64,000 nucleotides of DNA from the sequence record ON529860.1. One strand, given 5' to 3'. Both the position numbers and the translations under genes were made by a program. How positions within the stretch are numbered: position 1 is the stretch's first letter; the number at the start of each line of letters is the position of its first letter. The notes beneath the pieces are model-generated. The model saw only the letters and a list, made by a program, of their open reading frames with translations, was not told the origin of the DNA and did not search any database. Shown piece by piece: positions 23,784 through 41,088 of this stretch.

Positions 23784-24187
23784 TGCCGGTCCTGTTCCAG
23801 AAGATCGTCAAGCGCGAGGACCTGCGGCGTAATCCGCAGGTGCTCTACGTGTTCGGCGACAACGTCCAGCGCGTGGGTCTGGGCGGCCAGGCCGGCGAGA
23901 TGCGGCGCGAGGTCAACGCCGTCGGTGTGGCGACGAAATACTCGCCCGCCGACTACTTCGGCGAAGACCCCGCCGAGGTCGCGGCGCAGAACCGGATCAT
24001 CGACCAGGATATGCGGCCCTTGTTCGAGAAGGTGAACCAGGGCGGCATCGTCGTCTGGCCCGCCGACGGGATCGGCACCGGCCTGGCGGACCTGCCGCGT
24101 GTGGCGCCCTCGACCTTCGCCTACCTCAACCAGAAACTGGCGGCCCTGCTGAAGGCGGCCGACCTGTTCGACAAGGAGACGGCATGA
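23783..24187 (+). CDS. Phage VFGDN/GGQA-family protein (possibly Macro-like)
   Basis: YVFGDN.QR.G.GGQA..R...NAVG..TK, WP..GIGTG.A. Confidence 0.55.
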   Translation: MPVLFQKIVKREDLRRNPQVLYVFGDNVQRVGLGGQAGEMRREVNAVGVATKYSPADYFGEDPAEVAAQNRIIDQDMRPLFEKVNQGGIVVWPADGIGTGLADLPRVAPSTFAYLNQKLAALLKAADLFDKETA

Positions 24188-26990: not shown

Positions 26991-29758
26991 TGGGGATGCT
27001 TCGTCTGCGCATCGTCGAGGTCGGCGCCGAAGGCGGCTTCCTGATCGAGCGGCGCCGGTGGTGGGGATGGGACGCCGTCGCCGTGCATGATTCTGTGTCC
27101 GAAGCCCATGACGACGCGATCACCATGGGCGTGATGTGGCGGCGGGTCCGAGGCTACGCGGATACGGCCCGCGTGCGCATCGTTGCGAACCACGCCTACG
27201 CATGAGCGCCCAGGCCATTCATCTGCTGGCGTTGATCGTGCTGTTTCCGGCCACGATCGCGTCGTTCGTCTGGTTCCTCATGGCGTGGGGATTCAGGGGC
27301 GGCTTCGGCGTCACCTGGCGCTCGGTCATCCTGTCCGGCGGCGTCTTCCTGACGCTGTTCATCGCCCTGGGCGTGGTCCTCTACCATCCCTACGCCCTGC
27401 CGAACCTCCTGTCCGGCATCGTCCTGCCGCCCAACCCCTTCAAGGTGTCCTAGCATGTTGACCGAGGTCTACTGCGCCCAGAAAACGATCGATGATCGCG
27501 GCGCGCTCGGCGCCGTCATCGGCTATTTCAGCACCGAACCCGCCGCCACCCTCGCGGCGGCGAAACAGGGCTGGTACGGCGGCGACGGTCGGGTCACGCG
27601 CTGCTGGATCATCGCCCATGAGGGCCGCTTCTATCCGATCGAACGGGGCATGGAGAAGGGCATGCCGCTCGCCCTGCTCGACCAGAACATCCCCGAGGAA
27701 ACCAAGCGCCTGCGCGCGGCGGCCTGGATCAAGGTCACCGAGGCGCTCAGCCCCGATGAACGAGACCTCCTGGGTCTCCAGGAGCCGAAGTCATGACCAA
27801 TCCCGTCGTCCTGATCGTCGAGGAGACGATCCAGCGCGCCTATAAGCTGGACCTCGACGATCCCGCCCACGTCGAAATGGTGGACCGGGTGCTGAACAAC
27901 CCCCTGGATCGACCGGCGGTGTTCGCCTTCGAGCGTCACACGCCGCCGGCCTTGTTGGGCAAGCGCGCCCTCAAGGGCAACCGCACGCCCTGGATCAGCG
28001 CCACGAATGCCAAGGGCCACCAGGTGCGCCTGGACCCGGACGCCGAACATGCCGTCAACTCGACGATGACGCTGTTGCACGTCGACGAGAAGGGCAAGGC
28101 CTACCACCAGGTCAAGGTGAAGCGCACCACGGTGGAACGCGGGCCGGTGAAGTCGTGATGGAATCCGACCTGCCCACGCCGGCGTTCCACACCTGCCGGG
28201 TGCGCCAGACGTTCCAAGGCACGCCGCCCGGCGTCATGACGCATGGCTATCGCGTCGAGCGGCGCTCGCGCTGGTGGCCGTTCTGGCGCGCCACCAAAGG
28301 CTTCTACGAGAGCCGTTCGGAGGCGATCGCCATGGCGCAGGCCTACGTGCTGGTCCAGGAGAGCCTCCACCGCGCCGTGCACGAGCCTGATGTTGTTTGG
28401 AGAGGTTGATATGCTTTGCCCTGAAAACGCCATGACGGTGGTCGGCGCGCCGCGCGACAAGAGCGGCCCGATCATCCTGCGCCTGCACGCCAGTCACTAC
28501 GCCCAGGCGGTGCAGGCGCTCCTGGAAGAGACGGCCGCCGACCTGCGCGACGACCTGAGCCCCGAGGAAGAGGCGGACCCGCAGGCCCAGGCGGACGCGG
28601 ACCACCAGGCCTGGAACGACGCCTGCGATCACTTCACCTCGGTGAAGGTCTATCGCGGACACCCGCTTGAAGGGTCGGACGTGGTGACGCCGCTCCAACT
28701 GATCCACGAGGAATAGATGCACCCTGGATTCTATGTCGTGCGGATGCCGAAGCACGGCGCCGGCAGCCGCTTGATTGTGGAGAGCCGACCGTTCCGAAAG
28801 ATCGCCTGGATCGAGGCGGAAGAGCCCGGCTACGCGCGCCGCCAGGCCGAAAGCTGGCGTGACTTCGTCCAGGACGAGCACCCCAAGGATGACGTCTTCG
28901 TCATCGAGCGTGAAGGCCCGATGGACGAATCCCCGCGTCCTCCTCGGCGGACGGACTGATGGAGCCGCCCTGCAAGAAACGCTTCCTGGCGAAGTCCATC
29001 CAGGACTTGGGGGAGTTCACGCGCCATTACGGCCTGACGCCGCCCGAGGGCCATGACCGGAGCCTGAAGGCTCTGGAGCAGAAATCCTGGGCGTGGTTCG
29101 CCAAATCGCTTCACGACGTCAGCGGCGAGATTTACAGCGCCAGCATCGACGCCTACTTGCGCCCGATGGATCGTCAGTGGGGCACGGCCATGGCGATCGC
29201 CTACGAGCCTGTGCGCGTCGGCGGGCTGGTCTTCATCTGGGACGCGCGTCCCTGTGGAAATCTGGATCGCTACTTGGACGCCGTCGGCGTCCTGGTGAAG
29301 ATCGATCGGGAGAAGAACCCCAACCGCCTTTACGAAGAGGACGGCGGACCCGCCAGTTGCGGTCAGCGCTACCACCTCCAGAAACTGGACGGGTCAACCG
29401 TCTCCTGGGGCAACTGCGCCCCGCGCAATGTGGTCTCACACCGGATCACCGAAATGAACCGACAGATCGTCAAGGACCTGGCAAGAGCCCGATGGCCGAC
29501 CCTCTGACCCCCGCCGAGATCGATGAAGGCTGGATGGCCGAGCCCTGCGGCTGCGCCTACCATCCCGGCTCCAGCACCCCGCGCGACCTCGGCGGCGGCA
29601 TGGTCGTGGTCAACGAAGGGTTCCGCCGCCGGTGGTGCCAGACGCACACCGATGAACTCATGCGCGATGGTGCGGCGCTGCGCTATCGGTTGTTCGAAGC
29701 GCCAGACGCGCCGGCGCCTAGCCCGATGGAACACTGGCTCCGGCGCAACCGCTGCTGA
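26990..29758 (+). CDS. Nine small hypothetical ORFs (26990-27205, 27202-27453, 27455-27796, 27793-28158, 28158-28409, 28411-28716, 28717-28959, 28959-29507, 29492-29758)
   Basis: Tight coupling and codon bias. No recognisable families. Confidence 0.6.
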
Positions 29759-29759
29759 C

Positions 29760-30230
29760 ATGGCGGTTCTCGACATCGGCTCATGGAAGCCCTGGCCCTC
29801 GGGCGCCCTGTCCAACTTCCCTCTCCACGCCTTCGTGTTCGAGGACGTCGAATGCGCCTCCATGGAGGGGCTGGTCCAGGCGTTCAAGTTCAACGAGCCC
29901 TACAAACAGGTCATCACCTGCAAGGCCGTGGGCGAGGCCGCCAAGAACATGGGACGGCGACGCAACCTGCACTGGCAGCGCGTCCAGACCCTGTGGTGGA
30001 AGTCGGACGCCTACGACCGCCACAGCCCCGAATACCAGGCGCTGCTGGATCGCGCCTACAACGCCCTGGCGACCAACCAAGACTTCCGCAACGCCTTGCT
30101 CGCGACGGGCGATCACTTCCTGACCCATTCGATCGGCGGACGTGATCCACACGAGACCATCCTGACCGAAGCCGAGTTCTGCACCCGGCTGATGCGGCTG
30201 CGCCGCGAAATCCGCGAAGGCCTGAGATGA
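29760..30230 (+). CDS. NADAR/YbiA-like protein
   Basis: LSNF..F.F....ASMEG..QA.KF, L.W....YDR, LLATG. Confidence 0.7.
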   Translation: MAVLDIGSWKPWPSGALSNFPLHAFVFEDVECASMEGLVQAFKFNEPYKQVITCKAVGEAAKNMGRRRNLHWQRVQTLWWKSDAYDRHSPEYQALLDRAYNALATNQDFRNALLATGDHFLTHSIGGRDPHETILTEAEFCTRLMRLRREIREGLR

Positions 30231-30481
30231 CCGCTCCTTGCATCTATCTTACGGCCCCGGCCGAACTGCATGAGGCCAAGCGCTTTGGCGACGGTTGGCG
30301 CCAGGTGGCGCAGCCGGAGCGCTTCCTGTGCGCCTGGGCCACCTACCACGAGGACGCCGTCACGGCGCTGTCGAAGGCGCCGCCCTGGCTGGTGACCAAT
30401 GCGCTCGCCGGGCACCTGGTGCGCGCCGACAAGGATTGCCCGCGCTGCCCCTACTACAAGGCCGGCGATCCGGTCGAATAG
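30227..30481 (+). CDS. Hypothetical protein
   Basis: ATGA overlap, C-terminal CPRCP. Confidence 0.55.
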   Translation: MTAPCIYLTAPAELHEAKRFGDGWRQVAQPERFLCAWATYHEDAVTALSKAPPWLVTNALAGHLVRADKDCPRCPYYKAGDPVE

Positions 30482-30501
30482 CCGTAAATCCTGACATCTT
30501 C

Positions 30502-30541
30502 TGCCGTATTTCTTGACACCTACGGCGGCGTTAACCATAGT
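30502..30541 (+). promoter_or_regulatory. TGCCGT-N5-TTGACA-17-CATAGT promoter (partial tandem copy at 30480-30496)
   Basis: Direct reading. Motif recurs elsewhere in the window. Confidence 0.7.
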
Positions 30542-30574
30542 CCGAGGCTTGAACCCCCGACCTCAGGACTAGCC

Positions 30575-31777
30575 GTGAGCACCTTTGCTGTTCCGATCCT
30601 CGCGATCGACGACGTCTACGATCACCCCAACGCTGATCGCCTCTCCATCATCCGCATTCGCGGCTACGAAGCCGTCGCCGGCAAGGCCGAGGACGGATCG
30701 CACCGCTTCGTAAAGGGGGAGCGCATCATCTACGTGCCCGAGGGCGCGGTGGTGCCGGCCGCGCACCTGAAGGCGCGGGGCTACTGGAACGAGGCCAAGG
30801 ACATCGGCCTGCTGGCGGGAACCAAGGGCAACCGCGTCAAGGCGATCACCCTGCGTGGCGTGCTGAGCCAGGGCCTGGTGTGGAAGACCGAGGCCCCTAT
30901 TAACGGGAATGCCGTTGATGCCCCGTTGTCGCTCCTTCACGGCCACGGAGAGAATGGCGTGCCGCAAGTTCGGCTGGCTGCGCTAGGCGACGACGTCGCC
31001 GACTTCTTCGGCATCACCAAGTACGATCCGCCCATCCCGCCGGGCCTGGACGGCGACGTCTTTGGCCTGTTCGAGGCGATGTTCAACTACGACATCGAGA
31101 ACGCCAAGGCCTTCCCGAACCTGTTCACCGAGGACGACGTCGTCACGGTGACGGAGAAGCTGCACGGCACCTTCTGCCGGATGACCTACATGCCCGGCAT
31201 CGAGCCGCGCGACGATCTGTTCGGCGACGGCCGCGTGGCGATCACCTCCAAGGGCCTGGGCGCCGACGGCCTGGTGTTCAAGAACACCGCCTTCAACCGT
31301 CAGAAGAACGTCTACGTCCGCAACATGCTGCCGCTGGTGGACCACTTCGTCTCGGCCTGCAACCAGGACGCCAAGGGCCTGACCGTCCACCTGATGGGCG
31401 AGGTTTACGGCGCTGGCGTGCAGGACCTCAAGTACGGCCGCACCGAAGACCAGGGCTTCGCCGCCTTCGACGTCTGGATCGAGAAGTCGGGCTTCCTGGC
31501 CGAGGTCGAGAAGGACTACGCCTGCATCGCCTTCGGGGTGGAGCGGGTGCCGGTGCTGTTCGAGGGCTTCTACGACAAGGCGCTGATCGAAGACTTCGCC
31601 AAGGGCGACACCACGATCGACGGCGCCGAGAACATCCGCGAGGGCGTCGTCGTGACCCTGACCGGCGAGCAGGACAAACGCCCTGACGGCAACGGCCTGG
31701 GCGGCACCCTGCGCCCGATCTGCAAGGTCGTGTCGGAAGCCTACCTGACCCGCAAGGGCGGGACCGAACTGCAATAG
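30575..31777 (+). CDS. RNA ligase, DRB0094/Rnl2-like family
   Basis: N-terminal HPNADRL..YVPEG..LRG.LSQGL. TEKLHGT adenylylation motif, GEVYG, AAFDV, REGVV, KVVS..YL. Confidence 0.85.
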   Translation: MSTFAVPILAIDDVYDHPNADRLSIIRIRGYEAVAGKAEDGSHRFVKGERIIYVPEGAVVPAAHLKARGYWNEAKDIGLLAGTKGNRVKAITLRGVLSQGLVWKTEAPINGNAVDAPLSLLHGHGENGVPQVRLAALGDDVADFFGITKYDPPIPPGLDGDVFGLFEAMFNYDIENAKAFPNLFTEDDVVTVTEKLHGTFCRMTYMPGIEPRDDLFGDGRVAITSKGLGADGLVFKNTAFNRQKNVYVRNMLPLVDHFVSACNQDAKGLTVHLMGEVYGAGVQDLKYGRTEDQGFAAFDVWIEKSGFLAEVEKDYACIAFGVERVPVLFEGFYDKALIEDFAKGDTTIDGAENIREGVVVTLTGEQDKRPDGNGLGGTLRPICKVVSEAYLTRKGGTELQ

Positions 31778-31792
31778 GAGTCACGTTTTCCG

Positions 31793-32137
31793 ATGCAGTC
31801 GCTTCAGGACGGCCTGGTTGAATGGGCCACCTACGCCTTCGGGCGTGAAACGATCGACGACCAGCGCCAGCGCGCCATGCGCTGCCTGGAAGAGGCGGTC
31901 GAACTGGCCCAGGCCCTGGGTGTGGATGAGGCGGCCTGCCACCGGCAGGTCGTCCACACCTATGGCCGCCCCGTCGGCGATCCCGCCCAGGAGGTCGCCG
32001 GCGTCATCAACGGCGCTCTGATGGCGGCCGAGAGCATCGGCGTCGACGGCCTGCTGGTCGCCGAGGCTGAACTGGAGCGGGTCTGGCTCTGCGTGGACGA
32101 CATCCGGGTCAAGCAACTGGCGAAGGTTCAGCCTTAA
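31793..32137 (+). CDS. MazG-like all-alpha NTP pyrophosphatase
   Basis: LEEAVEL ... QEVAGV helical acidic motifs. Confidence 0.6.
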   Translation: MQSLQDGLVEWATYAFGRETIDDQRQRAMRCLEEAVELAQALGVDEAACHRQVVHTYGRPVGDPAQEVAGVINGALMAAESIGVDGLLVAEAELERVWLCVDDIRVKQLAKVQP

Positions 32138-32140
32138 GCC

Positions 32141-35119
32141 GTGGCCCACATCGACTATGAGAACAACCTGTTCCTCGGACGCGGCACGTTCGAGGAGCGG
32201 GAAATCTTCCGCGATGTCCTGGGCAAGTTCCAGGGCTTCACCTTCTCCAAGGAATACGGCTGCTGGACGACCGGCGACGTCGTGATGGCCCAGGCGGTCA
32301 AGGGCGTGGTCTGGACCGACCGCGCCATGGCGCGTCTGCGCACCCTGCTGGAAGCCGCCAAGATCAGCGAAGAACTGTCGTGGCGATCGGATACGACCTA
32401 TGTGCCGCCGTCGCCGCCGGGGTTGAGTTACCTCCCCTACCAGCGCGCCGGCATCGAATACGCACTGATGCGCAAGGACACGCTGATCGCCGATCAGCCC
32501 GGCCTGGGCAAGATGGCGAGCGTCAATACGCCCGTACTGACCCCGTCTGGGTGGCGCCGTATGGGCGATCTGGCCGTGGGTGACGACGTGATCGCCGTTG
32601 ATGGTCAGTCCACGCGGGTCATCGGGGTCTATCCCCAAGGCATTCTGCCAAACTATCGGGTTCGATTCCGGGACGGCACGACGACCAACTGCGGCGCCGA
32701 CCATCTCTGGGCCGTCGGAAGCCCGACGCGTCGAAACCGCGCAAAAGCGATGGGCAGGCCAGACTACGAATACACGGTCAAGTCCCTTCAAGAACTGATG
32801 GACGGCGGGCTCACCTCGTCTCCCGACGGCGTCCGCGTGGGGGCGAAATGGTATGTGCCTCTGGTCGAGCCGGTCGCGCACCCCGCGCGGGACCTGCCGA
32901 TCGACCCCTACATTCTCGGCGTTCTCCTGGGCGACGGCGCCTTGACCTCCTGCGGCACCGGGTTCTCCAACCCGGACATCGACGCGGACATTCGCGACGA
33001 AGTCTCACGGCGCCTGCCCGACGGCTACCACCTGCGCGTGGACCGATCTTCGGGCTGCCCGCGCGGCATGATCGTATCGGAGACGCACAAGGTTCACGCG
33101 CTCAAGGCCGCGCTCCGTGACCTGGGGCTGAACGCCCTCAGCGGCGATCGCTTCATCCCTGAAGGCTATATCCTCGCCTCCGTCGAACAGCGGCTGAGCC
33201 TGCTGCGCGGGCTCATGGATACGGACGGCTCATCGAGCGGAAACCGGATCGCCTTCCACACGACGTCGCCCAGGTTGGCGGCGGGGGTGGCCGAACTCGT
33301 CCGCTCGCTGGGAGGCGTAGCGATCGAACGGTGGTATGACCGCGAGGCTGAGGGTAAGCCTGCCGAATGTCAGGTCAACGTGAAGATGGCGATCTGCCCC
33401 TTCTTCGCACGACGCAAGGCCCGCAACTGGTCACCCCAAAACCCGCGCCGATACATTCATGCCGTTGAGCGGATCGAGGACTGCGAGCAGGTCTGCATCG
33501 CGGTCGATCACCCTCGCCGGCTCTATGTCGCCGAGCACTACATCGTCACGCACAACACGATTCAGGCGATCGGCGTCCTGAACGCTGACGAGACCATCAA
33601 CAGCGCCCTGTTCATCGTACCGGCCTCGCTGAAGATCAACTGGCACCGCGAGATCGACAAGTGGATGCTGCCCAACCTGACCTTCGGCATCGCCGAGGCC
33701 AAGCGGATCGACAAGGAGTTGATCGGTTACGCCAAGGCCTATGAATATGTCGAGGACGGGGTCTACAAGACCGGGGCCAAGGCGGGCCAGCCCAAGTTCA
33801 AGAAGGTCGAGGTCCAGGGCAAGCCCAAGTATCGCAACGTCGAGACGTCCGACTACTGGCCCGACACCGACGTCGTCATCATCAACTACGACATCCTGGA
33901 GCGCTTCGCGGTCCAGATCAAGGAACGCAACTGGGATTACCTAGTCTGTGACGAATGCCATGCGCTGAAGAGCGCCGCCACCGGCCGCACCCTGTTCGTC
34001 CTCGGCGGAAAGCAGGAGTTCAACAAGGCCCAGCGCGACAAGCGCAAGGCCGAAGGCCTGTCGTCGCGACCGATCTGGCATCGCGCCATCGACGCCAACC
34101 GTCGCGTCTTCCTGTCCGGCACGCCGATGATGTCGCGGCCGGTGGAGTTGTGGCCCGTCGCCCACGCCTTCAACCCCTCCGACCTGGGTCGCGACTATGT
34201 CGACTTCGCCTACCGCTACTGCGCCGCCTGGACGACCGCCTACGGTCTGGACGTTTCGGGCGCCTCGAACCTGGAGGAGTTGGGCCAGAAGGCCCGCGCC
34301 AGCTTCATGGTGCGCCGGCTGAAACGCGAGGTGCTGCCGGAACTGCCGCCCAAGCGCCGCATCGTCGTCACCTTGGATAGCCCTGAAATCCGCGAACTGG
34401 TCGCCCGTGAAGACGAACTGGCCCAGGCGTTGCGCCTCTACGAGAACGTCACCCTCAACAAGGGCGTGGTGGTCGACGAGATCAACCACGGCATCCAGAT
34501 CGTCAACCACATGACGCGGATGGGGATGACGGACGAGTTCGATCCCGACAATCCGAACTGGCGCTCGCTCGACCTCGACTACGCCGCCTCGGTCGCCGGT
34601 CTGGAGCCGCCGGCCGTCGCCATCCTGTTCGAGGAAATGGCGAAGGTGCGCCGCGATCTCGGGCTCGCCAAGCTGAGCGCGCTCAAGCCGTGGATGGATG
34701 ACTTCCTGGAGGGCGGCGAGAAGCTGCTGATGTTCGCCTACCACTCCGACGTGGTCAAGGCGCTGGCCCTGGCGGCCGAGAAGTGGAACCCGGCGGTGAT
34801 CTGGGGCGGCACGCCCCTGCACAAGCGCCAAGGCGAGGTCGACAAGCTGCAAGGCGACGAAAGCTGCCGCCTGTTTATCGGCAACATCCAGGCGGCCGGC
34901 GTCGGCTTCACCATGACGCGCGCCCATGACGTCGCCTTCGCCGAGGGCGACTGGGTGCCCAGCCAGATTGAGCAGTGTGAGGACCGCGCCTGCCGCATCG
35001 GCCAGACGGCCGAGAAGATCAACAGCTACTTCCTGGTCGCCAACGGCTCGCTCGATTCCCGCATCGCCCAGGCCGCCAAGGCCAAGGAAGACAACATCAA
35101 CCTGGCGATGGGGGCGTGA
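32141..35119 (+). CDS. Snf2/SWI2-like SF2 helicase, intein-interrupted
   Basis: YQ..G, ADQPGLGK|TIQA, DECH, LSGTP, RRLK.EV, QCEDRACRIGQ. Confidence 0.9.
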   Translation: MAHIDYENNLFLGRGTFEEREIFRDVLGKFQGFTFSKEYGCWTTGDVVMAQAVKGVVWTDRAMARLRTLLEAAKISEELSWRSDTTYVPPSPPGLSYLPYQRAGIEYALMRKDTLIADQPGLGKMASVNTPVLTPSGWRRMGDLAVGDDVIAVDGQSTRVIGVYPQGILPNYRVRFRDGTTTNCGADHLWAVGSPTRRNRAKAMGRPDYEYTVKSLQELMDGGLTSSPDGVRVGAKWYVPLVEPVAHPARDLPIDPYILGVLLGDGALTSCGTGFSNPDIDADIRDEVSRRLPDGYHLRVDRSSGCPRGMIVSETHKVHALKAALRDLGLNALSGDRFIPEGYILASVEQRLSLLRGLMDTDGSSSGNRIAFHTTSPRLAAGVAELVRSLGGVAIERWYDREAEGKPAECQVNVKMAICPFFARRKARNWSPQNPRRYIHAVERIEDCEQVCIAVDHPRRLYVAEHYIVTHNTIQAIGVLNADETINSALFIVPASLKINWHREIDKWMLPNLTFGIAEAKRIDKELIGYAKAYEYVEDGVYKTGAKAGQPKFKKVEVQGKPKYRNVETSDYWPDTDVVIINYDILERFAVQIKERNWDYLVCDECHALKSAATGRTLFVLGGKQEFNKAQRDKRKAEGLSSRPIWHRAIDANRRVFLSGTPMMSRPVELWPVAHAFNPSDLGRDYVDFAYRYCAAWTTAYGLDVSGASNLEELGQKARASFMVRRLKREVLPELPPKRRIVVTLDSPEIRELVAREDELAQALRLYENVTLNKGVVVDEINHGIQIVNHMTRMGMTDEFDPDNPNWRSLDLDYAASVAGLEPPAVAILFEEMAKVRRDLGLAKLSALKPWMDDFLEGGEKLLMFAYHSDVVKALALAAEKWNPAVIWGGTPLHKRQGEVDKLQGDESCRLFIGNIQAAGVGFTMTRAHDVAFAEGDWVPSQIEQCEDRACRIGQTAEKINSYFLVANGSLDSRIAQAAKAKEDNINLAMGA
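32513..33556 (+). mobile_element. LAGLIDADG intein (348 aa) in helicase Walker A
   Basis: GK|MASVNTPVLTP...HLW...LGVLLGDG...LRGLMDTDG...QVCIAV...IVTHN|T. Confidence 0.9.
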
Positions 35120-35538
35120 CCTCCCGCACCGCGTGGCAAAAAGAGGTCGACGACCTGTTCTGGGGCGGCGAGCCGTTCGCCGCCCGCCAGCGCCGGGTCG
35201 AGACTGAACGCCGCGAGCGGTGGTCCCAGGAAGTGCGCATCAATCCGTCGGCCGAGGTCTTGGTCGGGCTGTGCCGTAAAGCGCGGTCGCAGGGTCTGCG
35301 CGGCATGTTGCACCAGGGCGACCTCTACTGGTGGCAGGCCTATTACGCCACGCACCACGACGTCCTTCACTGGATGGCGATCCCCGGCAACAAACTGGCG
35401 ACCGGCGTGGAGTTGCACGTCTTCGATGACGGAGCCGTCGGCCTGACCACGTTCGACCGGACGACCTTCGAGGCGTGCTTGATCCATCCGAGTCTGATCG
35501 GCCGGATCGACGCTGAAGGCGTGCTGATCAGCCGCTGA
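35116..35538 (+). CDS. Hypothetical protein
   Basis: GTGA overlap with helicase stop. Confidence 0.6.
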   Translation: MTSRTAWQKEVDDLFWGGEPFAARQRRVETERRERWSQEVRINPSAEVLVGLCRKARSQGLRGMLHQGDLYWWQAYYATHHDVLHWMAIPGNKLATGVELHVFDDGAVGLTTFDRTTFEACLIHPSLIGRIDAEGVLISR

Positions 35539-35619
35539 CAGGCGCCGGCGTTTTCGGCGCCGCAACAAAACTGTGATAGGGGCGTTGGTCAGGTTGTAGT
35601 TTTTGCCTTCAGGACCCCT

Positions 35620-35949
35620 ATGCATACCCGACAACCCGAAGAGTTCGCCCGAATCCTCGACGAGGCGGCCGAGCATATCGCACGCCAACCCATCCATCCC
35701 GGCCAATCCCTGCCGGGGTTATGGAACCTGGACGACGATTCTCACGAGCCGGCGCGCCTGATCGGCGTCATCGTGGCCTCGGCCCTGGCCCAGGTCTGCA
35801 AGACCGGCGATTGCGACCTGCAAGAGGCGCTCGCCAGCTATGCGGCGGTCTCTCACAACATCCCCCTGGTCGCCAAGGGCGGTCCGGACGTGATCGCGGC
35901 GCAGAACCTGCGCGACGCCGCCAGGACCCTGCGCGAAGCGCGCCATTGA
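35620..35949 (+). CDS. Hypothetical protein
   Basis: ORF preceded by AGGA, ends at the terminator. Confidence 0.55.
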   Translation: MHTRQPEEFARILDEAAEHIARQPIHPGQSLPGLWNLDDDSHEPARLIGVIVASALAQVCKTGDCDLQEALASYAAVSHNIPLVAKGGPDVIAAQNLRDAARTLREARH

Positions 35950-35952
35950 CGC

Positions 35953-35987
35953 AAAAAGGCCCGTCGCTGTCGAGCGCCGGGCCTTTA
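35953..35987. terminator. Bidirectional terminator closing the minus-strand RNA operon
   Basis: AAAAAGGCCCG...CGGGCCTTT. Confidence 0.8.
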
Positions 35988-35991
35988 ATGT

Positions 35992-36078
35992 TGGAGGTGC
36001 GACCTGGACTCGAACCAGGATGAGGGTTTCCCCTACGGCTTATGAGGCCGCTGCCTATTCCAGCCGCGCCACCGCACC
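35992..36078 (-). tRNA. tRNA, anticodon CAU, long variable arm, U73, encoded CCA
   Basis: GGTGCGG/TCGCACC acceptor, GCGGC-CTCATAA-GCCGT, variable arm AGGG-GAAA-CCCT, CCTGG-TTCGAGT-CCAGG. Confidence 0.85.
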
Positions 36079-36089
36079 AAAAAGAAGTC

Positions 36090-36168
36090 CAGGCGTGCTC
36101 CCGTTACACTAAACCGGCGAGGGTCATGACCCTCGGGCGCCGGCTGCGGGATCGAACCGCTCTACCTG
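36090..36168 (-). ncRNA. Circularly permuted tRNA mimic (YrlA-type module)
   Basis: 5'-CAGG, T arm GCGG-TTCGATC-CCGC, AGCCGGC/GCCGGTT acceptor closed by a palindromic loop, D arm GTGT-AACGGGA-GCAC, CCTG. Confidence 0.75.
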
Positions 36169-36210
36169 TGTATCCGCTGTCCGCGCCACGCCAGCGTCCG
36201 CCGCTAAGCG

Positions 36211-36277
36211 GGCGCCTGGAGAGTCGAACTCCGACAACGAAGATTCGGACCAGCCCGTCGGCCGGTCCACGAACGCC
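36211..36277 (-). ncRNA. Aberrant tRNA-like element
   Basis: T arm GGAG-TTCGACT-CTCC, weak acceptor, 9-bp hairpin replacing the D arm, no CCA. Confidence 0.4.
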
Positions 36278-36309
36278 GCGACGCCGAGGGAGGCGTCGGG
36301 GCGGTCGAA

Positions 36310-36387
36310 TGGGAGCGGGGACACGATTCGAACGTGCGATCTCTTGGTTATGAGCCAAGAATGTTGACCGGGCTACACTACCCCGCG
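36310..36387 (-). tRNA. tRNA-Met(CAU), initiator-like (C1:U72 mismatch)
   Basis: CGCGGGG/CCCCGCT, CTTGG-CTCATAA-CCAAG, GCACG-TTCGAAT-CGTGT, CCA. Confidence 0.85.
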
Positions 36388-36391
36388 ACTC

Positions 36392-36780
36392 TTAGGCGCC
36401 AGTTCCGACGGCAGTGCGCCGGCTGGTACTCAACGGGCTCCTCCGCCGACCCTGCGCCAGGAACCATGGCGGGCACAGGATCAAGACGGAGGCGTTGCTT
36501 TACACCCACCTTGGACGTCGGACCCGTCGGGCCGACGAAACTTTGACCAGGGGTTGTGGGACGAGTAATCCCGCCCTCTGGCCCGGCGGACTACTAGGCC
36601 TGCCCTTGCCTGGGCTCCCCCAGGCGTCCGGCACGACTTTTGGTCAACCAACCTTTACTCACGAAGACGGACGTAGCACCCGGCGTGGATCGGAACTGGT
36701 AGGCCCCTCTCCTGAACGGGCCGCCGTGCTCTGGCGGGGGTCCGTCGTCATCGCCGCCGGCGTCCGCCTGCGAGAGTAAA
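36392..36780 (-). ncRNA. Unassigned ~390-nt structured RNA
   Basis: No credible ORF. Long-range helices 36690-99/36399-408 (10 bp), 36654-60/36774-80, TTGACCA/TGGTCAA arm. Confidence 0.55.
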
Positions 36781-36782
36781 GT

Positions 36783-37118
36783 GGGGAACTTTCTGTTCCA
36801 AGGCCCGGCAAGCCGGGGTTCCCCATACCCGTGGTCGCCCTTAGGCGGCCAGGAGGACTCGTTCGCCAGCGGCGAAGTTGTCGTTGGAAGCTTCGACAGT
36901 TGTCAAAGTTGGATCGTGAGCGGCCTAAACCGCCATGCAGACCCTAGCACTCGCCATTCAATCCCGTCACCAACGTCAATCGATACTGTTCGGCCCCTCA
37001 AACCGCGCCCGTCTCCCATCATAGGAGGGGGATTGGTGGAGCCGACGGGATTCGCACCCGTGTCTTGCCCGTCTGTTTCGTTCTCTCTGCTTCGGACCGA
37101 AGTCCTCCGCGCGACGAA
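36783..37118 (-). ncRNA. ssrA: Circularly permuted (two-piece) tmRNA
   Basis: T arm plus CGGCTCC-A-CCA (37034-44) precedes GGGGCCG (36991-97) with a G3:U70 pair. Tag ORF 36891-36841 = ASNDNFAAGERVLLAA*. Confidence 0.92.
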
Positions 37119-37122
37119 ATGC

Positions 37123-37163
37123 CTGTATACAGAGTCCGTTTTGGAGTGTCAAGGATTACGTCA
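37123..37163 (-). promoter_or_regulatory. tmRNA promoter
   Basis: TGACGT-N5-TTGACA-17/18-(G)TATAC(A). Confidence 0.7.
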
Positions 37164-37171
37164 AAGATTTT

Positions 37172-37258
37172 TGGAGGGACGGGTGAGAATCGAACTCACG
37201 CCAGGCTTTCGCCAGGAGGATTTGCAGTCCCCCGCCTTACCACTCGGTCCACCGTCCC
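37172..37258 (-). tRNA. tRNA-Cys(GCA) with long variable arm
   Basis: GGGACGG/CCGTCCC-U73-CCA, GGGGA-CTGCAAA-TCCTC, variable arm GGC-GAAA-GCC, GTGAG-TTCGATT-CTCAC. Confidence 0.88.
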
Positions 37259-37267
37259 CTGGCATCG

Positions 37268-37404
37268 GTCTGGAAAGGGGAACCCGCCCGTGCCCGCCGC
37301 AGGTCCCGTGGTCGGTCCCGGCGGCGTCAGGGTTTCACGGCCCCAGGTCGACCCGCTCCCGTGATAGAGGGCGATACGCTGCGGGCGGGCTCGCCTTTCC
37401 AGAC
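37268..37404 (-). ncRNA. Rod-shaped RNA, 6S-like (tentative)
   Basis: 11-bp closing stem GTCTGGAAAGG/CCTTTCCAGAC, second stem, asymmetric bubble, apical stem. 3' CCTGCGGCGG. Confidence 0.5.
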
Positions 37405-37463
37405 GAAAAGGACCGCCCTGTTGCACTCCCCGGAGGGATCGTGTGACGGCCCGTGACCCTCGC

Positions 37464-37492
37464 CTTATAACGGAAGCGGTCGGGGCAGGCAA
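37464..37492 (-). promoter_or_regulatory. sigma70-type promoter of the RNA operon
   Basis: TTGCCT-17-TATAAG. Confidence 0.6.
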
Positions 37493-37637
37493 GTTCGAAA
37501 ACGCGCGGATGTCAAAAATCTCGGCACTTCGACAGGATTCTGCCGATAAAATGTCGATTGAACTTTATGTTAAGACGTGCTAAGGTTCTCATGCAGTCGT
37601 CAGCAACAGACTGCGTCCTGCCAACGGAGACATACAG

Positions 37638-38375
37638 ATGCTGCACAGTGTTCATGGTACGGTTCCTAAGCTTAAACGATGGTGCGGCCCCTCCGCCATC
37701 TCCATCATTACAGGCCAGCCCTATCACCACGCTTTGGCGTTGCTTAAGGACGTCAAGGCCGCCAGACGAACCTACCGCGTAACGAAGGCGCCGATTGTCA
37801 AGGGCGCGTCATCGCCTAGCGTGCGCGCCGTTCTGAAGAGCCTGGGTTATCTGACGACGCAGCGGGTGACGCCGGCAGGGATCACCGTCGCGGCCTGGCT
37901 GGCGGCGCGTCCTCCCGCCGACCAGTTCACCACCTTCCTGATCGTGGCGGCCAACCACTGGATGGTGGTGCGCGGCGACGAGGCCTGCTGCGGCATTCTC
38001 GGGACGCCGACGCCGGTCGAGCGCATGAAGTTCCGACGCGGCGTCGTCACCGAATGCTGGGTCGTCACGCCGTCCTCGCAGGGCGTGGCCCCGATCGTGA
38101 CCGAGGCGCGCAAGCCGTCCGCTCGGGCAGCGTCCTCCTGGGACCGCAGCGAGGCGCGCGACCGCCGCGCCTTCGTCAAGCTGGCGCGCCAGCACGCGTT
38201 CACCTACGACATCGTCCGGGATTGCGACACGATCCGCTACATGGAGATCGCGCCCTGCGCCGTCTTCCCCAAGGGGCTGGACACCCTGCACCATGACTGG
38301 GCGGAAACCCTGGATCGGGTCCGGCATTGCCTCGATCACCCCGAGGACGCCGCCTCGGGCAGCTACGGCCGCTGA
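37638..38375 (+). CDS. Papain-fold (peptidase C39-like) protein
   Basis: WCGPSAISII and ANHWMVV Cys/His motifs. GGAGA RBS and TTGAAC-17-TAAGGT promoter. Confidence 0.55.
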   Translation: MLHSVHGTVPKLKRWCGPSAISIITGQPYHHALALLKDVKAARRTYRVTKAPIVKGASSPSVRAVLKSLGYLTTQRVTPAGITVAAWLAARPPADQFTTFLIVAANHWMVVRGDEACCGILGTPTPVERMKFRRGVVTECWVVTPSSQGVAPIVTEARKPSARAASSWDRSEARDRRAFVKLARQHAFTYDIVRDCDTIRYMEIAPCAVFPKGLDTLHHDWAETLDRVRHCLDHPEDAASGSYGR

Positions 38376-38381
38376 ACGCAA

Positions 38382-38415
38382 GAGCCCCGACCGATCACTC
38401 GGTCGGGGCTTTTTC
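38382..38415 (+). terminator. Intrinsic terminator
   Basis: AGCCCCGACCGA-TCAC-TCGGTCGGGGCT-TTTT. Confidence 0.9.
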
Positions 38416-38434
38416 TCGCGCCATCGTCTGTGTC

Positions 38435-39402
38435 TCGGCCGGCGCAGCGTCAGAAGGGTGTGTCGCGAGACCTCCGTCGCGGTCCCAGGGCACTGGGGCT
38501 CCCTGGAACAAACCTCACCTGAACGTGGCTTTCCTCCCCAAGGGGCTGAAGGTGGCGGGGTCCAGGCGACCCTGTGGGGCTCACACGGCAAGGCCTCTTC
38601 TCAATGCCAGGCATAGAAGTAGGCAGAGAGCATAGGTTCTTCCTACCCTCGTCATTGTCGTGGTCCGTTTTCCGTCTATCACAGCCTCTGGCTGCCGTCA
38701 CGCCTGGTTCCCATTTCTAGGACGGCGTTCCCCTCAGAAGACGGGTCCTGGTAGACCGCGTGTGGCTCTTCAGCGCCTGACGGAACTCGACGACGTGGTT
38801 GCCGGCCGTCTGAACTAGCGTCCCCAAGCGCCCCCATGGACATGCCGTAGGGGTGTGGCAGGGTCCGCCCCACGCTGTGTCAGGATATACGACAATGAAG
38901 AGGGGGAGGTCAATACCGCCTCTGGCGGCCGTCACGCCTAATCGTTCGTCTCGGGCGGCGTTCCCGTCAGGCCTGATTGTCCCCGGCCGAGGTTTGTTCG
39001 GGGGAGCGGTGCGGTCAATCACCCCGACTCACGTTCTCTCGTAACCCGACAGCACGGGCTTAAGCGCGCACGAGCGCTGTGATACAGTCACGCGGTGGTC
39101 GACCTATGGTGAGGTCATCGAGCCCAGTCGCGCAATCCCACCCTGTATGACGGGATTCATGGCTATCGTCAAGGGGTAACGGGCGCTCTCTCCCGGTCAC
39201 GCCTCGTCCTGATGTCTCAGCCGGCGTTCGCTTCAGACAGTACGGCAATCTCGGGGCCGTCCCACGCTCCCGCTGTCGTCGGGCCTGTTCCCAGAGGAAG
39301 GTCTACTCCAGGGCAGTCTGCTCCAGAGGCCAGGTCAGGGCGAACCCTGTGTGCTGCGCCTAAGGACCTTCAGCAAGATTGAAGCCTACCAGAACAAACC
39401 GA
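38435..39402 (-). ncRNA. Giant (~960 nt) ORF-less structured RNA
   Basis: Bounded by terminators. Four 8-11-bp perfect long-range complementarities and three copies of a covarying module. G:U polarity favours the minus strand. Confidence 0.7.
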
Positions 39403-39410
39403 AACGGGCA

Positions 39411-39444
39411 AAGAAAAACGGCCCCGATCCGAAGATCGGGGCCG
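39411..39444 (-). terminator. Terminator downstream of Ro60
   Basis: CGGCCCCGATC-TTCG-GATCGGGGCCG-TTTTTCTTT on minus strand. Confidence 0.9.
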
Positions 39445-39502
39445 CATCGTTCTTTACGCGACAGCGTAATTCCGCGAACGGATTACGAATACCCGTATTG
39501 GA

Positions 39503-40888
39503 TCAGCCGCCGACGAGGCCGTCGTCGAACTCCATCGCCTCGACCTCACGGATATAGCGCAGGACGCTCTCCGAGAAGCCGTCGATGTGGACCCATCCGT
39601 TGCCGTAGCCGATGCCATTCGCATAGCTGGCGACGTTGATCATATAGGCCTTGCCGGCCTTGGGCGCCGGCAGTCGCCCGCCGCCCATGCCGCTGCTCAG
39701 CGTTCCCGACGCCTGTTCGTCGGTGATGACGATCAGGCGGTCGCAGGCGAACTGACGGTTCACCACGTCCACGGCCTGGGCCAGGGCGGTGCCCTGGTGC
39801 GGCTGCGAACGGATCACCGCCTCGACGCCCGCCATGCCCTTGCGGGCCGGGACCTCGACCAGACCGTTGGAGAAGGTCACGACGCGCACGTCGCCCGGCA
39901 GGATCGCCGCCAGCGTCGCCGCCGCATCCATCCGGGTCAGGTCCGACTTTCCGGACAGTTTTTGCCGCATGGAGTAGGAGACGTCGACCATGACCACGGT
40001 CGAACCCTTCAAGGGTTCGGCCTGATCAATCGTCGCCACGAGGGCGTCGTCCAGCGCCCGCTCGAACGAGGGCGCATAACGCGCCGCCGCCGTGAAGCGG
40101 AAGGGCAGGACGCGGTCCGCGCCCTTGCGCGCGCGGATCGCAGCATTGACCAGATCGCGGTCGACGCCGGCCTGATCCATGTTGCGCAGGTTGCGCAGCA
40201 GGGCGAGGTAGCCCAGCTTTCCGTCGGCCAGCAGACGCGTGAACGTCGCCTTCTTGTCGGCGCCGCCCGACAGGGCGACTTCCCAGGTGTCGGGCGCCGT
40301 CAGTTCATTGTCGACCAGCTTCTTGTAGAGGGCCTCGCGGTCGTCGTTCGCCGGCTTGGCGTGCGCCAGGAACAGAACGTCGCGCAGGCGCACGGACTTG
40401 GCCCGGTCGTACTTGGCGATCTGATAGGCGTCGAAGTTGCCGAAGGCCAGCGACAGCCCCTTCTTCACCTGAGCGGACAGCGGCGCCTTCTTGCCGTCGG
40501 CGCGCACCGGGTTGAGCGCCCAGTAGAGGGCCAGGAACTCGCTCAGTTCATCGGCGCGTTGGATGACGCGGGCGATGGTCAGCGACACCAGGGCCGAGCC
40601 GGACCCGCGTTGGGCCAGAACGACGAGCAGCAGAAGGGGGACGTGACGCAGCTTGGCGTCCTCACGCGCTTCAATCGCGATCTGGGCGAGGGTCTCGACC
40701 GGAACTTCCTTGGCGAGGCTCTGGATACGGTCGGCGATCGACACGCCGCTCTCGTAGAAATTGTCTTCCCACAGCAGGCAGGACATGACCGACCGGCGCA
40801 GGGCCTGGGTCTTGGTCATCCGATCGGCCGGTGCGCCTTCATGGGTGCGCGCGGTGGTCGTCTTGGGCTTTGCGTTGATCGACGCCAT
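39503..40888 (-). CDS. rsr: Ro60/TROVE-domain RNA-binding protein with vWA C-terminus
   Basis: RSVMSCLLWEDNFYE, LRHVPL, QRADEL, YQIAKY, TWEVALS, YLALLRNLRNM, DVSYSM (MIDAS), VITDEQ. AGGAG RBS. Confidence 0.93.
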   Translation of the reverse strand: MASINAKPKTTTARTHEGAPADRMTKTQALRRSVMSCLLWEDNFYESGVSIADRIQSLAKEVPVETLAQIAIEAREDAKLRHVPLLLLVVLAQRGSGSALVSLTIARVIQRADELSEFLALYWALNPVRADGKKAPLSAQVKKGLSLAFGNFDAYQIAKYDRAKSVRLRDVLFLAHAKPANDDREALYKKLVDNELTAPDTWEVALSGGADKKATFTRLLADGKLGYLALLRNLRNMDQAGVDRDLVNAAIRARKGADRVLPFRFTAAARYAPSFERALDDALVATIDQAEPLKGSTVVMVDVSYSMRQKLSGKSDLTRMDAAATLAAILPGDVRVVTFSNGLVEVPARKGMAGVEAVIRSQPHQGTALAQAVDVVNRQFACDRLIVITDEQASGTLSSGMGGGRLPAPKAGKAYMINVASYANGIGYGNGWVHIDGFSESVLRYIREVEAMEFDDGLVGG

Positions 40889-40910
40889 AATGGGTCCCCT
40901 CCTCGTCTGG

Positions 40911-41088
40911 TCAAGCGACCAAGAGGTCGGGGAGGAACAAGCACGAGCCCGGTTCATCCGGTGCGTCTACCACTTCCGCCACCTGCACCAGAGATGCAGG
41001 CCAGGACTTGAACCTGGATACCCTTGACGGGCGCCGGCTCCAGCGAAGTATAGGCTCGTTACGCCATCCCCGACCTCGCGGTCAGTGA
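40911..41088 (-). ncRNA. Y-RNA-like element D: permuted class-II (Leu-like) tRNA mimic
   Basis: Terminal stem GAGGTCGGGGA/TCCCCGACCTC, variable arm, T arm CCAGG-TTCAAGT-CCTGG, looped acceptor CCTGCAT/GTGCAGG, D arm GCG-GAAGTGGTAGA-CGC. Confidence 0.8.

What the first reader, a model, noticed from the sequence alone, without database searches (positions are those of the whole stretch)
38681..39229. Triplicated covarying module inside the giant RNA
Seen (minus strand): GAACGCC-N17/18-AGGCGTGAC-hairpin at 39229-196, 38963-931 and 38730-697. CGCC/GGCG is flanked by a potential tandem G.A motif. The following hairpin changes compensatorily (CCGCC-AGA-GGCGG vs CAGCC-AGA-GGCTG). A second motif, CACAGGGT(T)CGCC(C)TG(G)ACC, occurs at 39333-51 and 38559-76. 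Inference: repeated protein-binding or oligomerisation domains, meaning the RNA grew by domain duplication.
Basis: seen in the sequence. Interest (0 to 1): 0.7.

Follow-up and report, generated by a model that had tools for sequence, protein, structure and literature searches.

The report
Widespread phage two-hairpin RNA motif, triplicated
The three repeated modules are real, but they are local copies of a small two-hairpin RNA motif, absent from Rfam, that occurs between genes and next to tRNAs in hundreds of unrelated phages and prophages, so they are not special domains of this one long RNA or Ro60-specific sites.

Summary
The window comes from Brevundimonas jumbo phage Papperlapapp. A fourth, degenerate copy lies just ahead of the terminator.

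They lie in a conserved noncoding unit of about 1 kb. The unit has its own promoter-like hexamers and sits between a Ro60/Rsr gene and a tRNA-Cys/permuted-tmRNA/tRNA-Met cluster.

A covariance model built only from unrelated metagenomic phage sequences recovers all three modules. They therefore belong to a widespread motif: (G)GA-ACGCC, a loop of 8-58 nt, GGCGU-GAC(A/G), then a 4-6 bp hairpin with a GAGAGA or AGA loop. I found 181 distinct instances with 89 different hairpin stems. Covariation is strong and G.U pairs occur on one strand only. Hosts span at least eight bacterial phyla.

Rfam 15 has no match, and the motif is not HK022 put.

The motif lies on the gene strand in short intergenic gaps: after major capsid genes, before terS or lysis genes, 2-18 nt before tRNAs, 6-21 nt after tRNAs, often in tandem, and twice beside pistol ribozymes. 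It does not travel with Ro60.

My best guess (0.3) is a cis-acting RNA processing and end-protection "punctuation" element. Antitermination, a released small RNA, a ribozyme and a DNA-level signal remain open. No transcript data were obtained.

The parts
39173..39240 (-). Module 1. It comprises CUGA-AGC-GA, P1 (ACGCC 39227-39223 with GGCGU 39203-39199), GAC, and P2 (CGGG 39195-39192 with CCCG 39183-39180, 8-nt AGAGAGCG loop).
   Evidence: Pattern match. Covariance model R1 hit, E = 8.6e-4 in a 115 kb search and 3e-5 locally. Orthologue with the same hairpin type in CcrColossus.
38909..38974 (-). Module 2. P1 is 38961-38957 with 38938-38934, followed by a GACG linker. P2 is GCCGCC 38929-38924 with GGCGGU 38920-38915, with an AGA loop.
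   Evidence: (E = 2.4e-5). This module gave the only BLAST match to CcrColossus.
38678..38741 (-). Module 3. P1 is 38728-38724 with 38704-38700, followed by a GACG linker. P2 is GCAGCC 38695-38690 with GGCUGU 38686-38681, with an AGA loop.
   Evidence: E = 7.7e-3; 2.7e-4. The minimum-energy fold reproduces P1 and P2.
38415..38453 (-). Degenerate fourth module. It has CUGACGC, then GCGCC, a loop with GGCCGAGAC, then GGCGC-GAG. The terminator hairpin takes the place of P2.
   Evidence: Repeat family D4, the sequence itself and the fold. It is not scored by model R1.
38385..39376 (-).
   Evidence: Frame-breaking indels between close relatives argue against a conserved ORF. Identity between Papperlapapp and Bambus is 90%, against 84-89% for the flanking genes and 73% for the upstream spacer. 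No Rfam family matched at E up to 10.
39383..39411 (-). Promoter-like TTGCCC, 17 nt, TAGGCT just after the Rsr terminator.
   Evidence: The hexamers are invariant in four phages while the spacer diverges. Equivalent sites occur in Gurke (TTGACA-18-TAAATG) and CcrColossus (TTGACC-17-TAGGGA, L002 3274-3302). The strict sigma-70 scan found nothing.
38380..38413 (.). Bidirectional terminator hairpin at the 3' end of the unit. The T-run is better on the + strand and the U-tract is poor on the minus strand.
   Evidence: I3; z = -4.4.
39336..39351 (-). Second motif, copy A (CAGGG-UUCG-CCCUG hairpin).
38563..38576 (-). Second motif, copy B (CAGG-GUCG-CCUG).
   Evidence: One pair is broken in Bambus.
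39503..40957 (-). Ro60/Rsr orthologue (TROVE plus vWA domains) upstream on the same strand. It is a neighbour, and no functional link to the modules has been shown.
   Evidence: Pfam and tblastn.

Best explanation
Each module is a copy of a widespread cis-acting phage RNA motif made of two adjacent hairpins. P1 has a conserved sequence (ACGCC/GGCGU), a purine flank and a cap of any length. P2 is a short covarying hairpin with a conserved purine loop (GAGAG or AGA). A GAC(A/G) linker joins them.

I propose that it works as a punctuation mark in long phage transcripts. In this model a conserved host ribonuclease cuts beside the compact, sequence-specific structure. RNase P acting on the P2 minihelix is one concrete possibility; RNase E cutting in the G-poor tail is another. 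After cutting, the structure stays on as a protective end for the RNA on one side.

In this window the modules would split or buffer a ~1 kb untranslated transcript roughly every 250 nt. In Caulobacter phage CcrColossus the equivalent RNA is the leader of the tRNA-Cys/tmRNA/tRNA-Met operon.

What is shown: the motif, its structure, its strand, its breadth and its positions. What is inferred: that cleavage occurs, which enzyme does it, and that the ends are protected.
For: - Family membership: model R1, built from 28 unrelated IMG/VR sequences, finds the three window modules.
- Structure: 99% of cells are paired and 104 cells have double changes, against 21 in shuffles, with 0 of 500 shuffles reaching the observed value. 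There are 89 distinct P2 stems. P1 variants are ACGCC/GGCGU, ACGUC/GGCGU, ACACC/GGUGU and ACGUC/GACGU.
- Strand: about 50 G.U cells against 8 unpaired cells, so only the gene-sense strand folds.
- Punctuation-like positions: the motif fills short gaps between same-strand genes. Upstream genes include major head protein (7 of 29), gp2.5-like SSB and RusA. Downstream genes include minor tail protein, terS and head-tail adaptor.
- tRNA contacts: a tRNA starts 2-18 nt after P2 in 14 cases, and a tRNA ends 6-21 nt before P1 in 8 cases. These distances are typical inter-tRNA spacings.
- Arrays and neighbours: tandem copies in 22 of 173 locus-strands. Pistol ribozymes share the same intergenic region in L062 and L109.
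- Possible RNase P and RNase E features: P2 starts with G-C in 76% of cases and is followed by A (68%), C (57%) and C/U, like an acceptor-end minihelix. The tail is G-poor.
- Host range: spread over at least eight phyla argues for a universal host partner.
Against: - No transcript ends were obtained. The only runs holding related sequence were assembled contigs, probably DNA.
- End protection alone does not need the strong sequence conservation seen in P1, the linker and the loop.
- The ACC tail is only partly conserved and is absent from the window's own type-2 modules.
- P2 is shorter than normal RNase P substrates.
- A hairpin 2 nt before a tRNA could hinder rather than help RNase P.
- Tandem copies are not obviously needed for cutting.
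- The instance set was collected with patterns that fix GGCGTGAC and GAGAGAC or CCAGAGG, so conservation of those letters is overstated.
Confidence: 0.3

Rival explanations
1. The motif is an element that acts on RNA polymerase. The nascent RNA binds the elongating host polymerase, or blocks Rho, and makes transcription resistant to terminators. This would work like HK022 put, protecting long untranslated tRNA and ncRNA operons and late operons.
For: - The motif sits near the start of early-left operons in temperate phages RHph_N2 and EBPR podovirus 1.
- In Morganella phage IME1369_02 it lies between a terminator/promoter region and a terminator-like hairpin just ahead of the holin and terS genes.
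- It follows RusA, where lambdoid late control normally sits.
- It precedes structured RNA genes.
- In CcrColossus three copies lie in the 750-nt untranslated leader of the tRNA/tmRNA operon.
- Conserved helix and loop letters, together with hosts from many phyla, fit a universal partner such as RNA polymerase.
- It is sense-strand specific, as put is.
Against: - Model R1 finds nothing in the HK022 segments searched, which should hold the put sites, which I did not locate.
- There is no sequence likeness to put as described in PMC9378689.
- Many copies sit after major capsid genes or 2 nt before tRNAs, where loading a polymerase makes little sense.
- Several copies per operon are not needed for a processive modification.
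- Terminator-like sites downstream are only weakly enriched (12% against a 7% background) and are just as frequent upstream.
Confidence: 0.2
2. The motif is a small RNA gene. Flanking tRNA processing, or cuts in mRNAs, would release a stable RNA of about 50-70 nt that acts in trans, for example as a decoy or sponge for a host nuclease or defence protein. Arrays would raise the dose.
For: The motif occupies tRNA-like slots in tRNA arrays with tRNA-like spacing. Tandem arrays are common. Loop and linker letters are conserved, as expected for a protein-binding site. The window's unit would yield three or four copies per transcript.
Against: Most copies lie in 5' UTRs or between ORFs with no evident releasing sites. 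No partner protein co-occurs in the flanks. The only recurrent neighbours are ordinary structural and replication genes.
Confidence: 0.12
3. The motif is a self-cleaving ribozyme of a class not yet described. It would cut phage transcripts without any host enzyme.
For: It has the same habitat as pistol, twister, hatchet and hammerhead ribozymes: phage intergenic regions, tandem copies, and proximity to tRNAs and to pistol itself. It is small, has an optional-length stem cap, and its conserved letters are in the junction and loop. Its spread is independent of host.
Against: No pseudoknot or closing helix was found. The P1 helix is conserved in sequence, which is unusual for small ribozymes. The motif is abundant next to known ribozymes. 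From my own knowledge, earlier screens of ribozyme neighbourhoods would probably have met and tested it.
Confidence: 0.1
4. The modules are repeated protein-binding (Ro60/Rsr) or self-association domains of one giant scaffold RNA that grew by domain duplication.
For: The RNA lies directly downstream of rsr on the same strand in seven Brevundimonas phages, the usual place for bacterial Y RNAs (PMC4201824). The whole unit is conserved, including its non-module parts. Modules 2 and 3 look like lineage-specific duplicates.
Against: - The motif is general and occurs without Ro60. PhiCbK has three copies and no TROVE gene.
- In CcrColossus the TROVE gene is 24 kb away.
- In CcrPW there is no module in the 7.4 kb fetched around rsr.
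- Only 1 of 178 motif loci has TROVE in the DNA held.
- No YrlA or Y RNA match from Rfam at E up to 10.
- The GNCGAA(N)G motif of YrlA fits only the Gurke copy.
- Predicted long-range helices are not kept in close relatives.
Confidence: 0.08
5. The motif is a DNA-level signal. It could be a promoter, either SP6-like for a single-subunit polymerase or a hairpin promoter. It could also be a structure-specific recombination or priming site on single-stranded DNA.
For: The motif always lies just 5' of units (ORFs and tRNAs) and is co-oriented with them. From GTGAC to the GAGAG loop, with a 5-nt stem arm, it resembles the SP6 promoter core GTGACACTATAGAAGAG (my own knowledge). The type-2 hairpin (5-6 bp, purine triloop) recalls N4 virion-polymerase promoters (my own knowledge). 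Some carriers have T7-like replication genes.
Against: - Free covariation of the stem around the would-be start site, and of P1, is not expected for a duplex promoter.
- G.U pairs on one strand only point to a folded single strand.
- Carriers include jumbo siphophages, Mu-like, P22-like and HK97-like temperate phages, which as far as I know have no phage polymerase.
- The AAC-to-CGT spacing varies from 13 to more than 40 nt, which rules out an ECF-type GGAAC-N17-CGT promoter.
- When a tRNA starts 2 nt after P2 there is no room for a sigma-70 -10 element.
Confidence: 0.1

Closest known systems
RNase III processing signals between genes of phage T7 (own knowledge)
   Same: Both are structured RNA elements repeated in the short gaps between genes of polycistronic phage transcripts, on the sense strand. 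After cutting, the T7 signals leave protective hairpin ends.
   Different: T7 sites are long irregular duplexes without a shared sequence core and are specific to the T7 group. This motif is about 50 nt, has a strongly conserved core, spans many phage types and host phyla, and also abuts tRNAs. Cutting has not been shown.
HK022 put RNA (PMC9378689)
   Same: Both are two adjacent hairpins in nascent phage RNA. Both act, or may act, in cis and are sense-strand specific. Both occur in early operons.
   Different: No similarity by covariance model. Put is about 70 nt with long irregular stems and a triplex, and is known from about ten lambdoid sequences. This motif is far more widespread and occurs many times per region.
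Small self-cleaving ribozymes of phage metagenomes (pistol, hatchet, twister-sister; HDV-like ribozymes beside phage tRNAs, own knowledge)
   Same: Same habitat, size, tandem occurrence and proximity to tRNAs. Pistol lies within about 200 nt of the motif in two loci.
   Different: No Rfam ribozyme model matches. The loop between the P1 strands can be as short as 8 nt, too short for an HDV-type nested fold. No pseudoknot was seen.
Bacterial Y RNAs (YrlA) bound by Rsr/Ro60 (PMC4201824)
   Same: The window's RNA is encoded just downstream of rsr on the same strand. It is a modular noncoding RNA near tRNAs.
   Different: No tRNA-like domain and no Rfam match. The module occurs mostly in phages without Ro60.
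GOLLD and ROOL large ornate RNAs (10.1101/2024.12.08.627333)
   Same: Both are large noncoding RNAs in phages beside tRNA genes.
   Different: No Rfam match. The conserved repeated unit here is a generic small motif. No evidence of multimeric architecture.
Kink-turn (own knowledge)
   Same: A possible tandem sheared G.A/A.G at the base of a Watson-Crick helix.
   Different: No 3-nt bulge plus canonical helix on the other side. The flanks show no pairing beyond chance.

Membership tests
Widespread phage two-hairpin motif defined here (model R1) | P1 ACGYC/GRCGU with a variable cap, a GAC(A/G) linker, and P2 of 4-6 bp with a GAGAG or AGA loop, scored by a covariance model built without any window relative | tested here: met
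   Window modules score 30.3, 23.6 and 19.5 bits, with E = 2.4e-5, 8.6e-4 and 7.7e-3 in a 115 kb search. No other significant hit in the 64 kb window.
Any Rfam 15 family (including YrlA/Y RNA, GOLLD, ROOL, pistol, hatchet, twister-sister, HDV-like, riboswitches) | Covariance-model match at the gathering score, or at least E up to 10 | tested here: not met
   No hit on 38400-39400 at E up to 10. None on the motif in 9 loci at gathering score. None at E up to 10 in L136 8480-8860.
HK022-type put antiterminator RNA | Sequence and structure similarity to putL/putR | tested here: not met
   Model R1 with filters off gave nothing below E = 0.05 over HK022 24000-40751. I take this segment to hold the immunity region; I did not locate the put sites.
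HK022-type put antiterminator RNA | Terminator read-through dependent on the RNA and on the beta-prime zinc domain | not testable with these tools
   Needs a reporter assay.
Y RNA / Ro60 ligand | Co-occurrence with a TROVE gene within a few kb on the same strand | tested here: not met
   This holds only for Brevundimonas phages. PhiCbK, CcrColossus and 177 of 178 motif loci lack a nearby TROVE gene.
Y RNA / Ro60 ligand | tRNA-like domain and GNCGAA(N)G near the 5' end (PMC4201824) | tested here: not met
   ARAGORN and Rfam found no tRNA-like element in 38385-39400. The short motif fits only the Gurke module.
Kink-turn | Tandem G.A pairs, a 3-nt bulge and a flanking canonical helix | tested here: inconclusive
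   The G.A flank is plausible. No flanking helix beyond the shuffled expectation.
ECF sigma promoter (GGAAC-N16/17-CGT) | Fixed spacing between AAC and CGT | tested here: not met
   The P1 cap is 8-58 nt, so spacing ranges from 13 to more than 40 nt.
Self-cleaving ribozyme | Site-specific self-scission in vitro | not testable with these tools
   Only the habitat is similar.

The most novel reading that the evidence does not exclude
The motif is a universal phage punctuation signal that hijacks a core host machine. It could be an RNase P minihelix that lets phages cut mRNAs and ncRNAs the way tRNAs are cut. It could instead be a compact RNA that reprograms RNA polymerase, or a further class of self-cleaving ribozyme. 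The window's 1 kb RNA would then be an array of such signals.
Probability: 0.3. Interest if true: 0.85.

Novelty: new variant of a known kind. Interest (0 to 1): 0.62.

Why it matters
A ~50-nt RNA structure with an almost invariant core turns up in jumbo, T7-like, P22-like, Mu-like and HK97-like phages and in prophages of Proteobacteria, Cyanobacteria, Acidobacteria, Verrucomicrobia, Planctomycetes, Chloroflexi and others. That spread implies a common, still unnamed step in phage gene expression that depends on a conserved host machine.

It has no Rfam family, and I found no description in the papers searched. If its action is worked out, it would explain many 'empty' intergenic gaps and tRNA-array spacers in phage genomes. 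It could also provide a portable insulator or processing part.

For this window, the result changes how the 'giant RNA' should be read. Its most conspicuous repeats are generic signals, and the Ro60 neighbourhood is probably incidental to them.

Tried and rejected
- Rfam at gathering and permissive thresholds on the window and on relatives: nothing on the modules.
- Put-type RNA: no model hit in the HK022 segments searched.
- Ro60 dependence: rejected by distribution.
- ECF-type promoter GGAAC-N17-CGT: rejected because the spacing varies.
- Sigma-70 reading with GTGACA as the -35 element: fails where a tRNA starts 2 nt after P2.
- HDV-like fold: the P1 cap can be as short as 8 nt.
- Closing helix between the flanks, or a kink-turn C-helix: no better than shuffled sequence.
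- Long-range helices of the 1 kb RNA (19 nt and 16 nt complementarities): one arm changes in Kabachok and Bambus with no compensation.
- Terminator enrichment downstream of the motif: weak and symmetric.
- Transcript evidence: public runs hold only fragments as assembled contigs. One wastewater 'RNA' run is probably DNA. No ends could be read.
- E. coli genomes: no copy found by blastn with the Morganella-phage copy as query.
- First broad pattern scan of IMG/VR: mostly chance hits, and useful only after filtering.
- Genome scan: roughly half chance hits, filtered with the model.
- Literature searches by sequence words were useless.
- Papers on phage structured RNAs and on the phiCbK genomes do not describe the motif.

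Full report
**Where the window comes from and what surrounds the finding.**
The stretch 37260-39500 is 100% identical to Brevundimonas jumbo phage vB_BpoS-Papperlapapp (357 kb, Dolichocephalovirinae). It is 86-99.6% identical to four sister phages. On the minus strand the order is as follows.
- A Ro60/Rsr orthologue (TROVE plus vWA domains, 39503-40957).
- A strong terminator (39445-39418).
- About 1 kb without a conserved reading frame.
- A bidirectional terminator hairpin (38413-38380).
- A convergent plus-strand ORF of unknown function (37638-38375).
- tRNA-Cys, a permuted tmRNA and two tRNA-Met genes.

**The observation.**
Modules 2 and 3 end in 6-bp hairpins with an AGA loop. These hairpins differ by one compensatory C-G to A-U change. 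Module 1 carries a different hairpin, 4 bp with an 8-nt AGAGAGCG loop.

A fourth, degenerate copy (about 38453-38415) precedes the terminator.

The second motif occurs twice as stated. It is a small, unremarkable hairpin, and one pair is lost in phage Bambus.

**The long RNA.**
Right after the Rsr terminator there are promoter-like hexamers, TTGCCC, 17 nt, TAGGCT (39411-39383). They are invariant in four phages while the spacer between them has diverged. Comparable sites open the homologous regions of Gurke and CcrColossus.

Between Papperlapapp and Bambus the unit is 90% identical. The modules are 94-97% identical, and the 5' part and the segment between modules 2 and 3 are 95%. This compares with 84-89% for the flanking genes and 73% for the upstream spacer. 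One- and two-base indels between close relatives argue against coding. The region therefore behaves as a functional noncoding unit.

Its two longest internal complementarities are not kept in relatives, so I do not claim a global fold. The minus-strand U-tract at the 3' hairpin is poor, so the 3' end is uncertain. Public runs gave no transcript information.

**The modules belong to a widespread motif.**
A first scan of IMG/VR gave mostly chance hits. Eight loci, however, also had a GAGAG-loop hairpin after GGCGUGAC, although the pattern did not ask for one. A second scan for the 3' half returned more than 116 contigs. In nearly all of them the stem arms are complementary, and most have an upstream (A)ACGYC that was not asked for.

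A covariance model built from 28 of these metagenomic sequences (A2, R1) recovers the three window modules (E = 2.4e-5 to 7.7e-3) and nothing else significant in the window. It also finds three to six copies in CcrColossus, three in phiCbK and one in Gurke and Kikimora.

On 95 distinct model hits, 99% of cells pair. There are 104 cells with double changes against 21 in shuffles, and 0 of 500 shuffles reach the observed value. G.U pairs are about six times more common than mismatches. This means the gene-sense strand is the one that folds.

Across everything fetched I count 181 distinct instances and 89 different P2 stems. P1 caps run from 8 to 58 nt. P1 variants include the compensatory ACACC/GGUGU and ACGUC/GACGU. 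These sets were collected with fixed words, so core conservation is overstated.

**Breadth.**
Cultured carriers include phages of Caulobacter, Brevundimonas, Rhizobium, Bradyrhizobium, Pseudomonas, Stenotrophomonas, Morganella, Providencia and Planktothrix/Synechococcus.

In a genome scan about half the pattern hits were chance. The model confirmed 47 copies in Proteobacteria, Myxococcota, Acidobacteria, Verrucomicrobia, Planctomycetes, Gemmatimonadota, Chloroflexi and Cyanobacteria. None of the Firmicutes, Actinobacteria or archaeal hits was confirmed. No copy was found in E. coli genomes.

**Not a known family.**
Rfam 15 gives nothing at permissive thresholds. The model finds nothing in HK022, and put as described in PMC9378689 has a different architecture. 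The papers I could search on phage structured RNAs and on the phiCbK genomes do not mention the motif. I cannot exclude that it sits unnamed in a large candidate list.

**Context.**
The motif lies on the strand of the neighbouring genes, in short gaps.
- Upstream genes are often the major head protein (7 of 29), gp2.5-like SSB, RusA or exonucleases.
- Downstream genes are often minor tail protein, terS, head-tail adaptor or methyltransferases. A Rhodobacter prophage shows the capsid-to-adaptor placement clearly.
- In temperate phages a single copy sits early in the leftward operon or just ahead of holin and terS.
- A tRNA starts 2-18 nt after P2 in 14 cases and ends 6-21 nt before P1 in 8 cases. 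In some arrays the motif takes a tRNA-like slot.
- Tandem copies 47-255 nt apart occur in 22 of 173 locus-strands. One 330-nt gap after a capsid gene holds three.
- Pistol ribozymes share the gap in two loci.
- The tail after P2 is A, C, C/U and G-poor. No helix closes the motif.

**Relation to Ro60.**
PhiCbK-type phages carry the motif but gave no TROVE match. In CcrColossus the three modules form the ~750-nt leader of the tRNA-Cys/tmRNA operon, 24 kb from its TROVE gene. CcrPW has no module next to rsr. Among 178 motif loci, only Gurke has a TROVE gene in the DNA held.

The array therefore travels with the tRNA/tmRNA cluster, not with Ro60. In the window a convergent ORF with its terminator appears to have been inserted between the leader and the tRNA-Cys gene. 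This is an inference from comparison with CcrColossus.

**Duplication.**
Only about 65 nt is repeated, not whole units. Modules 2 and 3 share the GACGG linker and AGA triloop with CcrColossus modules 2 and 3, and with the Gurke and phiCbK copies. Module 1 shares its 8-nt loop with CcrColossus module 1.

The array and its order therefore predate the split of these genera. Local duplication of a generic element is the simplest account. The AGA-loop variant also occurs in unrelated contigs, again right before tRNAs.

**Mechanism.**
Positions at unit boundaries, tRNA-like spacing, tandem use, sense-strand folding and an enormous host range point to a cis-acting RNA signal read by a conserved machine. 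I rank the possibilities as follows.
1. Processing and end protection: 0.3. RNase P on the P2 minihelix is one concrete version.
2. Polymerase-directed antitermination or anti-Rho: 0.2.
3. A released small RNA: 0.12.
4. Self-cleavage: 0.1.
5. A DNA-level signal: 0.1. The GTGAC-to-GAGAG stretch is strikingly like the SP6 promoter core (my own knowledge), but covariation and the phage types argue against this.
6. The Ro60/scaffold reading: 0.08.

None of these is demonstrated. The decisive data are RNA end maps and simple in-vitro cleavage and read-through assays.

Noticed in passing
window 36841-37096 (-), with tRNA-Cys 37172-37258 and tRNA-Met 36310-36387 and 35992-36078: The phage encodes a two-piece (permuted) tmRNA inside a small tRNA cluster. 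The same arrangement is present in CcrColossus and phiCbK.
   Followed up: partly
window 37464-37492 (-): A second promoter-like site, TTGCCT, 17 nt, TATAAG. It lies about 200 nt ahead of tRNA-Cys and is followed by a GC-rich, probably structured leader (37260-37460).
   Followed up: no
window 37638-38375 (+): A 245-aa ORF with no Pfam match, convergent with the long RNA and sharing its terminator. It is absent at this position in CcrColossus, so it is probably an insertion that split an RNA leader from its tRNA operon.
   Followed up: partly
window 30575-31777 (+) and 39503-40957 (-): An RNA ligase (PF09414) and a Ro60/Rsr gene lie within 10 kb of the tmRNA/tRNA cluster. Together they look like an RNA repair and quality-control set in a jumbo phage.
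   Followed up: no
L062 2308-2374 (+); L109 1577-1649 (-): Pistol ribozymes lie within about 200 nt downstream of one or two copies of the motif, after the same upstream gene.
   Followed up: partly
L242 (Pseudomonas phage Itty13) 2560-3150: A noncoding stretch of about 1.2 kb ahead of terS starts with the motif. It contains several tRNA-like T-arm sequences that are not annotated as tRNAs.
   Followed up: no
L126 (Gurke) 5647-5745: A module-like copy keeps CUGACGG and the GG-hairpin-AGA part, but about 100 nt replaces the usual P1. It is possibly an insertion into the P1 cap.
   Followed up: no
window 38498-38516 / 38989-39007 and 38646-38661 / 38889-38904: Two long internal complementarities of 19 and 16 nt in the 1 kb RNA. 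One arm of each varies in sister phages without compensation, so they are probably not conserved helices.
   Followed up: yes
window 38552-39283, run X5: A metagenome contig from a diverged relative keeps the module-containing blocks and replaces three intervening stretches of 68-118 nt. This shows that the conserved parts of the RNA are discontinuous.
   Followed up: partly
L129 (Xanthomonas phage Sopo) 2890-3563: About 675 nt with no annotated gene lie upstream of a close Rsr homologue (58% identity) in a 44 kb phage, with no module in it. This is a candidate place for a phage Y RNA.
   Followed up: no
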